A stretch of DNA of 63,956 nt, the filler included, from Intoshia linei (Eukaryota; Animalia; Orthonectida), in the NCBI GenBank assembly GCA_001642005.1. It is 6 parts of 6 records of this genome, joined end to end, with 100 filler letters (N's around TTAATTAATTAA, not from the genome) between each part and the next. Parts side by side here need not be neighbours in the genome. Positions count along the whole stretch, not along the records: positions 58,700 to 62,511 come from LWCA01002173.1; 5 more parts are not named here. One strand, 5' to 3'. The notes below the pieces were generated by a model. That model ran no database searches. It was given only the letters and a program-made list of their open reading frames with translations, and was not told where the DNA came from. The position numbers were made by a program, and so were the translations under genes. Below, piece by piece: positions 58,700 through 63,956 of this stretch. The number at the start of each line of letters is the position of its first letter. Position 1 is the stretch's first letter.

Positions 58700-59829
58700 A
58701 TATGAAAATGTAAATTCGAATACAAATTGTAATAAGAAAATTGGGTCAAAATTATAAAAAAACGTGTTAAATTCATATTTCACCACTTTAATTTAGGAAT
58801 TAAGACACAAAAAAATACCACGTTAATTAAATTTCACAAAAAATTTTTGACAATTTTTTACAAATGTTGTTTTTTTACTTTTTTTTAAGAGAAATCAGAT
58901 ATATTATTAAAATTGATATCATTCTCAATTGACATTAAGCAAAGCACATTCAAACGAGGTTGAGCTAAGCAATTTCAAAGTTCATATTTAATTATTTTTA
59001 GTTTAGAAAATCTTCAAACTTCAATAAACTTCAAAACTTATCAACTGATTCTTAAAATATAAATTTGAAAAATTTGTTAGTAAAATAGGGTCTCTTTTTA
59101 CAATAAATGTGAAATACTTTTATTTATTTAGATATTTTTTTTTAAGATATAAATGTAAAAAATTTTTTATTAATTTAANATTTTTAGTTACATAATTTTT
59201 TTCATCAGTTACAATTTTTTTATTATATAGGATAAACCACTTTACTAATAACGTTTTATTTTATTTTTTTACTTATTTGTATATTTATTTAAAAAATTAG
59301 ATATGATTTTAAAGTTATTTGTATAGTAAATACATTTTGTATTAAATCTGATATGAAAATGTAAATTTGAATACAAATTGTAATAAGAAAATTGAGTCAA
59401 AATTATAAAAAAACGTGTTAAATTCATATTTCACCACTTCAATTCAGGAATTAAGACACAAAAAAATACCACGTTAATTGAATTTCACAAAAAATTTTTG
59501 ACAATTTTTTACAATTGTTGTTTTTTTACTTATTTTTAAGAGAAATCAGATATATTATTAAAATTGATATCATTCTCAATTGACATTAAGCAAAGCACAT
59601 TCAAACGAGGTTGAGCTAAGCAATTTCAAAGTTCATTTTTAATTATTTTTAGTTTAGAAAATCTTCAAACTTCAATAAACTTCAAAACTTATCAACTGAT
59701 TCTTAAAATATAAATTTGAAAAATTTGTTAGTAAAATAGGGTCTCTTTTTACAATAAATGTGAAATACTTTTATTTATTTAGATATTTTTTTTTAAGATA
59801 TAAATGTAAAAAATTTTTTATTAATTTAA
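58700..59829. repeat. ~480-bp near-identical direct duplication (58700-59178 / 59351-59829)
   Basis: Copies differ by only a few substitutions. Adjacent to a gap and a single N at 59179. Confidence 0.85.
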
Positions 59830-61269
59830 GGTTGTTTTTAATGAGGGCCCTGGGCTTCAGCCCATATTGCCTATACTTTAAAACGGCTCTGACTAGATTG
59901 TTTCAAAAAATAGAAATTATGCGAGTTTTTATTAGCTTTAGTAAAAATTAAGTTAGTATTTATATTTAGAGTACTATGTGACTTTTATTTTTTCAAAAAA
60001 TTGGTTGTCGAGTTGCGCACTGCAAATAAATATTTTTTTAAAAAATATTGAAAAATAGTTTATTATCTGAATTTTTATTGGTTGATATATCAAAATTATT
60101 AACAAATATGAATTTTACACGCAAATTTATTTTTTTTATGACTTATTTTTGAGTGAAACAGAAAAAGATGTATAACTGAAATATATATACTTATTATTAT
60201 TATTAAAAATAATTAAACTAATTATAAATTAAAGCAGTAACATGCAAAAATAAACTTTTGTGTATATTTAATGTATATATAACTTTATTATTGCATTTAT
60301 TTATAAAGATTGATTAATAAGTCGCTAATTACTAAAGTTTGTATTCATAGGGGTGCACTGTATTATCTTTTTAAAACTTAATTTTATATTAGTTACTATT
60401 TACTTATTTTCTTATAAATTGTTTAAAAAATACGCAATCAAACACTCTACCGACGCATAAATGCTGATTTAATAATAATTTTGATTTATATGAAAAACTT
60501 TAATATAACTAATTTCTTAAAAATTAATAATTAATTGTTATAAGGTTTATTCATAACTGAAATTTATTATATAAAATAATATTATATTGTTTGATTATTT
60601 TAATTTTGAAGTGCTTTGCCCGAGATTTTTTTAAATTTTTTTTGCATTATTGATTTAGATATTATAGAATTTAACCCTTTTTTTATTGTACGTATGTGTA
60701 ATTTTGTATTTTCTTTAAAAGGTGTAAAATTGTTCTATAATTTTTGGTCAAATATTCTGTTATTTATAATGTGAATAAAATTCATTACCTACAAATACGG
60801 TTAATAGTACATTTATTAAAACAGGTTTATTATAATATGCAATTATGTACAGATAAAAATATAAAAAATATTAATTTAAAAAATGGTTGAGTTTAGCCAA
60901 TGCTCTAAGTGTTTTGCTTTTCAATACTTTTGACATATTTGATTGTGGCAGAATCTTGATAATTTGTGTTTCTCACGTGCCTTTGAAATTATTTATTATA
61001 AAAATTATTAAAAATATATTAAATAAATATCTTGATTTCATAATTATAATCATCTGAATATAATCTATTTTTTATTAATTGATTTGTCAATTCAACACTT
61101 TTTTTAAATTCTAGGGCTGTTTTTATTTTAAAACAAATGGTAATGTTGGTTGTGATTGTGAAAATTATCTTTTTTGATGTTTCTATTTATCATAATGTTA
61201 ATTATCATTTTTGTAAAATTACGTGCAAATTATATTAAATTTTAGTTTAATCATGCGAAAGTTAATTTA

Positions 61270-62511
61270 AAAAAAATAAATTTTACGCAATGGATAAACC
61301 ATACAAAAAAAATATTTTATTTCTAATTTTTATAATCGAATAATTGCAAAATAATGAAGACGAAAATCTTATTTATTATAGGCTAAAATTGACAAAATAG
61401 TTTTTTTGATATGTATTAATTCATTATTAACAAAATTTAAGATTCTATATATAAAATGTTTTGATAGCCCAAAAAGTTACATTTATTATATAAATTATGT
61501 AAGTTAATTACACTATATTTTTTATTTTAGTTGAAAATTGTATACAATATAAAAAAAACAGTAAACTTGTATGTCTTATATGTAAATTAGGATATTTAAA
61601 GAATTCTTCAGGCTATAAATGTGAAGGTAAAAATTAATATATTTTAACTATATAACAAATGGTAAAAAAGCATATAGATTATTTAGATAACATAATACTT
61701 TTGAATATCTTAAAATTTTAATTTAATTTAATAAATATTATATATAAATATCATCTCTCTTCATTATAACAATTTTTTTAATAACTTAACGACTGATTAT
61801 AGTAACATTTAGCTATTATGATTACTTTTCAAAAAATATGATATGTAGACTAGACATGACTAATTCTATAATAAGTTAACTATAAATGCCTGTATGTTGG
61901 AACAATGAGAAAATAAATATGAAATAGTGTAGTCATTTCAAAATTTGTCAAAACTTTAAAAGACATACGCTAATTTAGAAGCTTTATTTTATACATATAA
62001 TACATAGTTATAACATATTTGTCGCAATAAATTTGCCATTTAAATATAGTATTTTTTGAGGCATCTCATAGTTCTGTTATTATTTTTATTATTTTTTGTG
62101 CATAAATTAGCNAAAAAAATAAATTTTACGCAATGGATAAACCATACAAAAAAAATATTTTATTTCTAATTTTTATAATCGAATAATTGCAAAATAATGA
62201 AGACGAAAATCTTATTTATTATAGGCTAAAATTGACAAAATAGTTTTTTTGATATGTATTAATTCATTATTAACAAAATTTAAGATTCTATATAAAAAAT
62301 GTTTTGATAGCCCAAAAAGTTACATTTATTATATAATTTATGTAAGTTAATTACACTATATTTTTTATTTTAGTTGAAAATTGTATATTATATCGAAGAA
62401 ACAGTAAACTTGTATGTCTTATATGTAACTTAGGATATTTAATGAATTCTTCAGGTGATAAATGTGAAGGTAAAAATTAATATATTTTAACTATATAACA
62501 AATGGTAAAAA
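61270..62511. repeat. ~400-bp direct duplication carrying the Cys-rich exon (61270-61668 / 62113-62511)
   Basis: Direct alignment by eye, with an offset of 843 bp. Confidence 0.9.
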
Positions 62512-63956
62512 NNNNNNNNNNNNNNNNNNNNNNNNNNNNNNNNNNNNNNNNNNNNTTAATTAATTAANNNNNNNNNNNNNNNNNNNNNNNNNNNNNNNNN
62601 NNNNNNNNNNNTGCAAGTATTAGAACGTTTTAAAACATTTTTACTATAAGGAAAAATAAAGTATAGATTTTTCACATCATTTAAAATTACTTTATTATCA
62701 TCATAGTTTAAATTTTCACAAGTTGAAATACGAGAAGAACAAATATTATTATATTTATATTTAACTAGCTTGGCAGTTTTGTATTACGTACAAACAGCAC
62801 CTAGCTCTTTCAAAAACACTCTTTTATTATAATAAAAAAATTTGTAGTTTAGATATAGATTTTGATAGTAATTAAACTTTTTGATAGCCCAGACGATTGC
62901 AAAAAATTCTGAATTTACGGTGCTGTATCGTATATGTGTTGTATTAAAAGTTTTACTTAAGTATGTTATGACGTGGTTGCCTTTCCGTAAGGTTGCTCTC
63001 ATACCTTGATGTGACGCATCGGTCTATCATCGCACTATATTAAGCTTAAAGTTCAATTCGAGAAATCTACGCATTCTCGATGAAAAATAAGTTTTAATAT
63101 ATTATCAACTAATATTTTTCAAATATATATATAAATTGAAAGTGTAAATATTATCCTACAATTTTAAAAAAAATGTGCAGTAAACGTTTACAAATTTCCA
63201 GTAAAGTAATATAAGTAAAAATTTATGTAATTTCTTTTTTCGCAATTTTTAAATTGTAAATTTTTATTTCAAAATATTTAAATTTGTCAATAAACGTTAT
63301 TTATTCGTTTAGAATGTCCACGCGAAGATTCTACAACATATTGCGACGGAACATCTGATTTAATAGGTAAAAAATTATAAATTTTTGATTACAGCATAAC
63401 CACCTGGGATGTTTTAACAACGTTACGAGATAAAATATTAAATTTATGAAATGCGTTATTTTTTTTAACTTACTTGTAAACTACTAAAAAAATGATAAAA
63501 ACATAATATAAAATATATAAAAATTCACAAAATATGTCGTATTTATTTAATTAACAGCCATAATTTGCTTAAATATCAAATTCCAATAATTTAACCGGTT
63601 TTAACTTTTTTTTTTGCACTGCAAACGATATTAGCTTAAAATTTACTGCATTTCAAAAAAGCCAATGAGTTAATATAATAGTTTTAAATCATATTTATGA
63701 TTCGTTATAATAATTTATAGTTGATAAAATTTTTTATTCAGATTCCACCGGAGTTATAACTGACTGTGCTATTTGTAACAGTGATAATGGTTTAAAGGGT
63801 CTTGTTTCTAAATTTGGTTATAATATATCGAAGCTAGTAAAGTATGTAAAGCTTATTAGCTTTTGTATAATGTCATGTAAAAAAACAATCAAAATATTTA
63901 AAGCAGAGGTGCAAAATTTGCAGTTGTACGGCAGAATGCGACGTGAGGGCGTTTAT
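61531..63956 (+). CDS. Cysteine-rich CxxC (furin-like/VSP-like) repeat protein, partial; exons 61531-61626, 62374-62469, 63313-63366, 63742-~63836, ~63908-end
   Basis: AG..GT-bounded exons (the first three phase 1-1) read ENCIQYKKNSKLVCLICKLGYLKNSSGYKCE, ENCILYRRNSKLVCLICNLGYLMNSSGDKCE, CPREDSTTYCDGTSDLI, STGVITDCAICNSDNG, CKICSCTAECDVRAF. The NC...CxxCxxGY...C spacing is typical of furin-like cysteine-rich repeats. Confidence 0.6.
62784..63030 (-). mobile_element. Ty3/Gypsy RNase H fragment
   Basis: DASHQGMRATLR...VITYLSKTF...RYSTVNSEFFAIVWAIKKFNYY is the Gypsy RNase H motif. Confidence 0.75.

What the first reader, a model, noticed from the sequence alone, without database searches (positions are those of the whole stretch)
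61270..62511. Duplicated Cys-rich exon cassette with hyper-divergent coding sequence and near-identical introns
Seen in sequence: two 96-bp phase 1-1 exons (61531-61626, 62374-62469) encode ENCIQYKKNSKLVCLICKLGYLKNSSGYKCE and ENCILYRRNSKLVCLICNLGYLMNSSGDKCE. They differ at 9 nt: CAA>TTA, AAA>CGA, AAA>AGA, AAA>AAC, AAG>ATG, GGC>GGT, TAT>GAT. That is 6 amino-acid changes and 1 silent codon, with all Cys and GY conserved. About 260 bp upstream plus ~43 bp downstream of intron differ at only 2 nt. Exon divergence far above intron divergence is the reverse of the normal pattern. Inference: diversifying selection or targeted diversification on a modular extracellular repeat, as in an allorecognition or variant surface antigen system, possibly with cassette or mutually exclusive splicing. 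More copies could be collapsed in the adjoining gap at 62512-62611. The exons are absent from the ORF track.
Basis: partly seen in the sequence, partly recalled or inferred. Interest (0 to 1): 0.85.

Follow-up and report, generated by a model that had tools for sequence, protein, structure and literature searches.

The report
Variable cysteine-rich exon, near-identical introns
Two near-identical 399-base stretches in a very AT-rich eukaryotic genome differ almost only inside a 96-base cysteine-rich exon-like segment, which probably marks a multi-copy family with a variable exon core, but the side-by-side placement of the two copies may be an assembly artefact and positive selection is not shown.

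Summary
Copies 61270-61668 and 62113-62511 align without gaps and differ at 11 bases. Nine differences lie in the 96-nt exon-like segment and two in 303 nt of flank (p about 7e-5).

- Copy B is a 399-nt island between a single N (62112) and the terminal gap, and its homology starts exactly at the N. Tandem adjacency is therefore unproven. It could be a haplotype or a mis-scaffolded paralog.
- Nei-Gojobori dN/dS is about 0.55, not above 1. Synonymous sites are also far more diverged than the introns. Point-mutation positive selection after a recent duplication does not explain the pattern. Older exon cores inside homogenised flanks fit better.
- Contigs of one related public sample show that most of the region is multi-copy. 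Several contigs match both flanks but not the exon core 61543-61618. One contig shows a tandem cassette with a period of about 157 nt.

No homolog, Pfam family, transcript or organism identity could be obtained. The closest known phenomenon is the "unusual conservation" gene families, such as the Hessian fly SSSGPs. This is a moderately interesting lead that needs long reads and RNA data.

The parts
61270..61530 (+). Upstream intron-like flank of copy A. It ends in a pyrimidine-rich tract plus AG.
   Evidence: It differs from 62113-62373 at 2 of 261 nt (61452, 61494). In sample X1, 6 to 10 distinct contigs cover 61417-61505.
61531..61626 (+). Exon-like segment A. It is 96 nt with a symmetric phase: 2 nt completing a codon, 31 codons, then 1 nt. 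It carries 4 Cys in the pattern C-x10-C-x2-C-x2-GY-x8-C.
   Evidence: It is the only AG..GT-bounded open segment with at least 3 Cys on either strand of the piece. The chance rate for such a segment is 1.25%. X2 contig record 15 matches 61566-61626 and stops exactly at the predicted donor.
61543..61618 (+). Variable core of the exon.
   Evidence: All 9 A/B exon differences lie at 61545-61614. X1 contigs align up to 61528, 61541 or 61542 and resume at 61619, 61625 or 61627 (joints).
61627..61668 (+). Downstream intron-like flank of copy A, with a GTAAAA donor.
   Evidence: It is identical to 62470-62511 over 42 nt.
62112..62112 (.). Single-N assembly join, marking the left limit of copy B.
   Evidence: Homology starts at 62113, and the bases to the left of the N do not match those to the left of 61270.
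62113..62373 (+). Upstream intron-like flank of copy B.
62374..62469 (+). Exon-like segment B.
   Evidence: It differs from A at 9 nt and 6 residues, with no stop, no indel and all Cys kept.
62470..62511 (+). Downstream flank of copy B, cut off by the end of the piece (gap).

Best explanation
The segment is most likely a real coding exon. It would be a 32-residue, four-cysteine module resembling a furin-like or VSP-like CXXC repeat. The exon with its flanking intron sequence forms a cassette that exists in many copies in this AT-rich eukaryote.

Across copies the non-coding flanks and the first and last few codons stay nearly identical, while the roughly 76-nt exon core differs strongly. Synonymous sites in the core are as diverged as replacement sites, and both far exceed the introns. 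The cores are therefore older lineages than the flanks.

The inferred mechanism is concerted evolution. Gene conversion or unequal crossing-over homogenises the unit, and either the exchange tracts stop at the core or selection keeps the cores distinct.

The two copies in the window are two members of this family. Copy B is a separately assembled 399-nt island, and its true position is unknown: a tandem neighbour, another locus or the other haplotype.

Shown: the divergence pattern, the island structure, and the multi-copy status with non-aligning cores in another sample. Inferred: that the segment is coding, the homogenisation mechanism, and the protein class.
For: - Divergence contrast: 9/96 against 2/303, p = 7e-5.
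- Synonymous sites: 2.5 differences in 17 sites against 2/303 in the flanks, p = 0.013. dN/dS is 0.55.
- Exon-like features are rare by chance, at 1.25% of simulations.
- The frame, all 4 Cys and the GY survive 9 substitutions. Under random substitution this happens about 9.5% of the time.
- Sample X1 lays 398 contigs on 59830-62111, most of them 85-95% alike. Up to 11 distinct contigs cover a single place, so most of the region is multi-copy.
- Five joints bracket the exon: 61528>61625, 61541>61627, 61542>61619, 61490>61615 and 61541>61692.
- One X1 contig goes from 61656 through three letters back to 61503. This is a tandem cassette with a period of about 157 nt and an intron of about 61 nt (table 5c).
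- An X2 contig matches 61566-61626, ends exactly at the predicted donor and then runs on unlike sequence (table 8).
- The ESM Atlas gives weak leads for both exons to VSP, Furin-like_2 and GF_recep_IV clusters, at scores 0.82-0.90.
Against: - There is no transcript evidence. No listed run is on record as RNA.
- No homolog was found. Pfam gave nothing at E up to 10. The search of 1.84 billion representatives gave only a spurious repeat peptide. The word-indexed search gave nothing, and neither did PDB sequences.
- No second exon of the gene is visible in 2.8 kb upstream.
- The family-level evidence comes from summary tables of short contigs of one sample. I could not read those contigs.
- 'Between: not known' joints could also mean that the exon is absent.
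- Two other bins of the stretch have even lower depth than the exon bin.
- The dN/dS rests on 9 differences.
Confidence: 0.45

Rival explanations
1. False exon gain. Copies A and B are the two haplotypes of one single-copy exon. The assembler could not merge the bubble because the alleles differ at 9 sites in 70 nt. The scaffolder then placed the alternative 399-nt contig beside the main contig with a single N. The polymorphism in the exon would be real and strongly elevated, but there would be no tandem duplication.
For: - Copy B is bounded by N 62112 and the terminal gap, and its homology starts exactly at the N.
- The same picture occurs at the other end of the piece. Island 58700-59178 is bounded by the gap and N 59179, and it duplicates 59351-59829 inside the main contig with 8/479 differences. 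Each island copies a part of the main contig near the end beside which it was placed.
- Published surveys find that false heterotype duplications arise where haplotypes are more divergent than elsewhere, are separated by assembly gaps, and create false exon gains (PMC9516828).
Against: - Sample X1 shows many more than two variants of the flanks, with 6 to 11 contigs per place, so paralogs exist.
- It also contains a contig with a tandem cassette junction.
- Depth per copy in the source reads could not be measured.
Confidence: 0.27
2. These are two physically adjacent tandem cassette exons of one gene. They duplicated recently and were then driven apart by diversifying selection on amino-acid changes. 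They are used as cassette or mutually exclusive exons of a surface or allorecognition protein.
For: - The two exons have the same length and a symmetric phase. Splicing one cassette to the next would keep the frame, because the G that ends one exon and the TT that starts the next form a Val codon.
- Tandem cassette junctions exist in sample X1.
- The changes are mostly replacements at non-Cys positions.
Against: - dN/dS is 0.55. It is not above 1, nor significantly different from 1.
- The synonymous excess over the introns (p = 0.013) is not explained by selection on protein sequence after a recent duplication.
- Adjacency is unproven because of the N.
- The sequence upstream of copy A shows no further unit.
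- No RNA data are available.
Confidence: 0.13
3. This is a non-coding repeat family, either dispersed or satellite-like, with a variable internal segment. The open frame with four TGT codons and the splice-like edges are chance features of 81% A+T DNA.
For: - Most of 59830-62111 is repetitive in X1, not only the cassette.
- With loose criteria (any AG..GT, open, at least 4 Cys), 30% of simulated sequences give a hit.
- The differences show no excess at third codon positions (3:4:2 over positions 1, 2 and 3).
- There is no homolog in any library.
Against: - With realistic splice criteria the chance rate is 1.25%.
- The variable core coincides with the open frame, and its limits fall next to the predicted splice sites.
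- A contig of another run breaks exactly at the predicted donor.
- The frame and the Cys survive 9 changes without indels.
Confidence: 0.12
4. The exon differences are consensus or gap-filling errors, for example a chimeric consensus of reads from several copies.
For: Copy B lies in a gap-adjacent island, where local assembly is least reliable.
Against: - There are nine substitutions with no indel, confined to 70 nt, and they preserve the frame and the Cys.
- The flank state of copy B at 61452 (A) is the one carried by all 6 X1 contigs covering that place, so at least that variant is real.
Confidence: 0.03

Closest known systems
Hessian fly SSSGP gene families ('unusual conservation'; PMC2955719)
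   Same: Paralogs have highly conserved non-coding parts, including the intron. Their coding segment is highly diversified. The published explanation combines diversification with concerted homogenisation of the non-coding parts.
   Different: - In the SSSGPs the variable part is the mature-peptide region of small two-exon genes with a conserved signal-peptide region. Here it is an internal symmetric 96-nt module exon.
- Strong positive selection was shown there and is not shown here.
- No signal peptide, tandem gene cluster or expression data are available here.
- The organism is unknown.
Hypervariable Cys-rich secreted peptide families with conserved pre-pro regions (mussel MgCRP-I, PMC4558851; conotoxins, from established knowledge)
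   Same: There is an invariant cysteine framework, and the residues between the cysteines are hypervariable (abstract).
   Different: Those are short secreted peptides with one Cys-rich domain. Here the unit looks like a repeatable internal module. No pre-pro region was seen.
Furin-like / VSP-type CXXC cysteine-rich repeats (Pfam PF15913, PF03302, PF14843)
   Same: The exon has a CXXC followed by G-Y, an even number of Cys per module, and a lysine/asparagine-rich composition. These families are the weak nearest clusters in the ESM Atlas for both exons.
   Different: No Pfam match appears even at E up to 10. The module is 32 residues with 4 Cys, and the one-exon-per-module layout is not documented for these families in my sources.
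False heterotype duplications / false exon gains in draft assemblies (PMC9516828)
   Same: The duplicate is separated from its partner by an assembly gap. The duplicated part holds an unusually divergent stretch. The result would be annotated as an extra exon.
   Different: Read-depth and k-mer tests that define such artefacts could not be run. Another sample shows real multi-copy status.
Aphid cassette effector families built from miniature exons (PMC7495047)
   Same: The genes are large, lie in AT-rich genomes, and are assembled from many tiny exons separated by long introns. Members share conserved and divergent cassettes.
   Different: Those exons are mostly 15 bp or smaller and not Cys-rich. 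The conserved part there is the signal-peptide cassette.

Membership tests
Furin-like / VSP-type CXXC repeat proteins (PF15913, PF03302, PF14843) | Significant match to the family profile | tested here: not met
   hmmscan of both exon peptides against Pfam-A gave 0 families at E up to 10. The only support is weak feature-space leads at 0.82-0.90.
Furin-like / VSP-type CXXC repeat proteins (PF15913, PF03302, PF14843) | CXXC motif with a following G-[YF] and conserved, even-numbered Cys per module | tested here: met
   The pattern is C-x10-C-x2-C-x2-GY-x8-C, and all of it is conserved between the copies. The consensus used for comparison is from memory.
Furin-like / VSP-type CXXC repeat proteins (PF15913, PF03302, PF14843) | Many modules in one secreted or membrane-anchored polypeptide (signal peptide, TM or anchor) | not testable with these tools
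   Only one exon type is present in the 3.8-kb piece. No full gene or cDNA is available.
'Unusual conservation' effector/toxin-type gene families (SSSGP-like) | Non-coding parts more conserved than the coding part among copies | tested here: met
   Divergence is 0.66% in the flanks against 9.4% in the exon, p = 7e-5. In X1 contigs the flanks align but the core does not.
'Unusual conservation' effector/toxin-type gene families (SSSGP-like) | dN/dS above 1 in the variable region | tested here: not met
   The Nei-Gojobori dN/dS is 0.55 (Nd 6.5 of N 76, Sd 2.5 of S 17), with p = 0.62. This is one pair only and has low power.
'Unusual conservation' effector/toxin-type gene families (SSSGP-like) | Conserved signal-peptide region and expression in a secretory tissue | not testable with these tools
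   There is no 5' exon in the piece and no RNA run.
Tandem cassette / mutually exclusive exon array (Dscam-like) | Two or more adjacent homologous exons of equal length and phase in one gene | tested here: inconclusive
   Length and phase are equal. Adjacency depends on a single-N join, and copy B is an island. A tandem junction was seen in one X1 contig.
Tandem cassette / mutually exclusive exon array (Dscam-like) | Transcripts that include one or a subset of the exons | not testable with these tools
   No RNA run holds the stretch.
False heterotype duplication (assembly artefact) | [quoted passage not shown] | tested here: met
   The N lies at 62112, homology starts at 62113, and there is no match to the left. 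The left end of the piece has the same layout.
False heterotype duplication (assembly artefact) | Each copy at haploid read depth, with haplotype-specific k-mers | not testable with these tools

The most novel reading that the evidence does not exclude
The genome carries arrays of symmetric 96-nt cassette exons. Their introns are kept near-identical by concerted evolution, while each exon core is a distinct, old variant. Transcripts would combine these cassettes by skipping or mutually exclusive use. This would diversify a Cys-rich surface or secreted protein, making a Dscam-like combinatorial system built on a CXXC repeat module.
Probability: 0.1. Interest if true: 0.8.

Novelty: new member of a known kind. 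Interest (0 to 1): 0.42.

Why it matters
Coding segments that diverge faster than their own introns are rare. They usually mark genes in an arms race, such as effectors, toxins, surface antigens and recognition molecules. They also mark loci where concerted evolution and diversification act side by side. If the family is confirmed, it would give a compact cassette in which the boundary between homogenised and variable sequence lies within a few codons of the splice sites. That boundary is useful for studying how conversion tracts or selection shape such genes. If the pair turns out to be two haplotypes, it is a clear case of a false exon gain. It would still flag an unusually polymorphic exon.

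Tried and rejected
- Ciliate code (TAA/TAG read as Gln): this gives no longer meaningful frame around the exon, so a spliced exon remains the better model.
- tRNA and Rfam scans of the piece found nothing, so no RNA gene explains the conserved flanks.
- Pfam with both exon peptides found nothing at E up to 10.
- Profile search of 1.84 billion representatives gave a single hit, P0001 (E 1.9e-5). It is a 73-aa peptide made of 24-aa tandem repeats from a single ENA contig. The match is 11/19 identities counted three times, so I treat it as chance.
- The word-indexed protein search with the open run through the exon found no candidate. That tool sees only proteins of 24-75 aa for this query, so longer relatives were not tested.
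- PDB sequences gave nothing.
- DNA pattern scans:
  - Metagenome contigs gave one hit, L001, which is a 30% GC contig with no further similarity. I treat it as chance.
  - Viral contigs gave nothing.
  - Prokaryotic genome contigs, scanned in the hope of host contamination that would name the organism, gave nothing.
- The organism could not be identified, because run metadata are coded.
Each exon was searched alone by reference.

Full report
**What is in the sequence**

The piece 58700-62511 has 19% G+C and contains two single-N joins, at 59179 and 62112. The repeat finder reports a 300-nt direct repeat with a start-to-start spacing of 843. Extended, 61270-61668 and 62113-62511 align over 399 nt without gaps and differ at 11 positions.

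- Nine differences lie at 61545-61614, inside the 96-nt segment 61531-61626 (partner 62374-62469).
- Two lie in the 261-nt upstream flank.
- None lies in the 42-nt downstream flank.

Both segments are open. Each encodes 31 residues with four conserved Cys in the pattern C-x10-C-x2-C-x2-GY-x8-C, and six residues differ. Each is preceded by a pyrimidine-rich tract ending in AG and followed by GTAAAA. The segment starts with two bases of a split codon and ends with one, so splicing one such exon to the next would keep the frame.

**Is it more than chance?**

- The contrast of 9/96 against 2/303 has Fisher p = 7e-5.
- In permutations, 9 or more of 11 differences fall in this window with P = 7.5e-5, and in any 96-nt window with P = 0.0019.
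- An AG/GTA-bounded open segment of 90-150 nt with a pyrimidine tract and at least 4 Cys arises in 1.25% of Markov simulations of the 2.9-kb unique part. With loose criteria the rate is 30%.
- It is the only such segment on either strand of the piece.
- Nine random substitutions would leave the frame open and all four Cys intact about 9.5% of the time.

Together these make a coding exon likely, but they do not prove it.

**Selection**

Counting by Nei-Gojobori pathways gives these values:

| Class | Differences | Sites |
|---|---|---|
| Synonymous | 2.5 | 17 |
| Nonsynonymous | 6.5 | 76 |

This gives dS 0.16, dN 0.09 and dN/dS 0.55, with p = 0.62 for nonsynonymous against synonymous. The differences fall 3:4:2 over codon positions 1, 2 and 3. 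So the data show no excess of replacements.

The more telling result is that synonymous sites are themselves far more diverged than the flanks (p = 0.013). If the two units had duplicated recently, as the 0.66% flank divergence implies, and the exon had then been driven apart by selection on the protein, the silent sites should look like the introns. They do not.

Two explanations remain. The exon cores may be older than their flanks, with the flanks homogenised or the cores exchanged as blocks. Alternatively, mutation may be locally elevated in the core.

**Assembly context**

Homology of copy B starts at the first base after the N at 62112. The bases to the left of 62112 and to the left of 61270 do not match. 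Copy B ends at the terminal gap. It is therefore a 399-nt island contig.

The other end of the piece has the mirror image. Island 58700-59178 lies between the gap and the N at 59179. It duplicates 59351-59829 inside the main contig, with 8/479 evenly spread differences. Each island copies a part of the main contig close to the end beside which it was placed.

This layout is expected when a scaffolder must place an unmerged bubble or a near-identical paralog. Surveys of draft assemblies describe exactly such heterotype false duplications. They occur at unusually divergent haplotype stretches, are separated by gaps, and produce false exon gains (PMC9516828). Some assemblers, from my memory and untested here, write a single N where the distance estimate is negative and no overlap is found.

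Tandem adjacency of the two exons is therefore not established. There is also an ascertainment effect: assemblers create such islands precisely where two versions differ most.

**Evidence from other data**

One small DNA study was found (coded X1-X3, contigs only) and was laid on 59830-62111.

- X1 placed 398 contigs. Of these, 32 were at least 99% alike and most were 85-95% alike.
- Up to 11 distinct contigs cover a single place, so most of the 2.3-kb stretch, not just the cassette, is multi-copy in that genome.
- Around the exon, five contigs align to the flanks and break at the core: 61528>61625, 61541>61627, 61542>61619, 61490>61615 and 61541>61692. The unaligned interval coincides with the interval that holds all the A/B differences.
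- Mean depth drops from about 110-117 in the two bins before the exon to 6.3 in the bin 61524-61600. Two other bins of the stretch are even lower, so depth alone is weak evidence.
- One X1 contig runs from 61656 through three letters back to 61503. That is a tandem cassette junction with a period of about 157 nt and an intron of about 61 nt built from the same conserved flanks.
- An X2 contig matches 61566-61626 with four differences. It stops exactly at the predicted donor and continues with 183 unlike letters.
- The copy-B state at 61452 is the one carried by all six X1 contigs there.

These are summary tables.

**Identity of the protein and organism**

No identification was obtained.

- Pfam gave nothing.
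- The search of 1.84 billion representatives gave only a chance hit amplified by repeats.
- The word-indexed search gave nothing within its length window.
- PDB sequences gave nothing.
- Rfam and tRNA scans gave nothing.
- The ESM Atlas puts both exon peptides nearest to clusters carrying VSP, Furin-like_2 and GF_recep_IV domains, at 0.82-0.90. By the tool's own calibration this is only a lead.
- Reading with the ciliate code does not extend the frame.
- DNA pattern scans of metagenome, viral and prokaryotic collections gave nothing related.

**Best reading**

My best reading (confidence about 0.45) is a real Cys-rich module exon that belongs to a multi-copy cassette family. The flanks and terminal codons are kept nearly identical by concerted evolution, and the roughly 76-nt cores are distinct, older variants. 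The two copies in the window are two members of that family whose true relative position is unknown.

The main rival (about 0.27) is a haplotype pair of a single exon, that is, a false exon gain. A non-coding repeat with a chance frame (about 0.12) and consensus error (about 0.03) remain possible.

**Comparison with known systems**

The pattern works like the 'unusual conservation' families of the Hessian fly. There, promoters, UTRs, signal-peptide regions and introns are conserved, the mature coding region is diversified, and the explanation combines positive selection with concerted homogenisation (PMC2955719). It also resembles hypervariable Cys-framework peptide families such as mussel MgCRP-I (PMC4558851).

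It differs in that the variable part is an internal, symmetric, repeatable module rather than a terminal mature-peptide region. Positive selection is also not demonstrated here. Membership in the furin-like/VSP repeat families fails the profile test and rests only on motif resemblance.

**Verdict**

It is overstated on selection and on the tandem arrangement. This is a worthwhile lead, not a discovery. Long reads and RNA data from the organism would settle it quickly.

Noticed in passing
window 58700-59178 and 59351-59829: A second gap-adjacent duplication. A 479-nt island lies between the piece's left gap and the single N at 59179. It copies an interior part of the main contig (spacing 651) with 8 evenly spread differences (1.7%). 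It serves as a baseline for duplicate or allelic divergence and as a sign of assembly redundancy.
   Followed up: partly
window 59845-59891: A short, relatively GC-rich element (47% GC in a 19% GC background) is extremely abundant in sample X1, with summed contig depth of about 1335. It is also present in X2. Contigs diverge on both sides of it, so it is probably the core of a high-copy mobile or repeated element. There is no tRNA or Rfam match.
   Followed up: partly
window 61099-61137: A second very high-copy 39-nt element (depth about 1338 in X1, 24 contigs; also in X2 and X3) has unrelated sequence on both sides in those contigs.
   Followed up: no
window 60847-60996: This stretch is matched by contigs of X2 and X3, which hold almost nothing else of the region. 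It has about 32% GC, above background. It could be a conserved element or an exon of something else, but no convincing frame was seen in six-frame translation.
   Followed up: partly
window 59703-59839: A degenerate 46-nt tandem repeat of about 3 copies (67% matches) lies immediately upstream of the GC-rich high-copy element.
   Followed up: no
window 61115-61165: A short open stretch after an AG contains three Cys codons (C-x11-C-x-C). It overlaps the high-copy element and is followed by a stop with no good donor. It is probably not an exon.
   Followed up: partly
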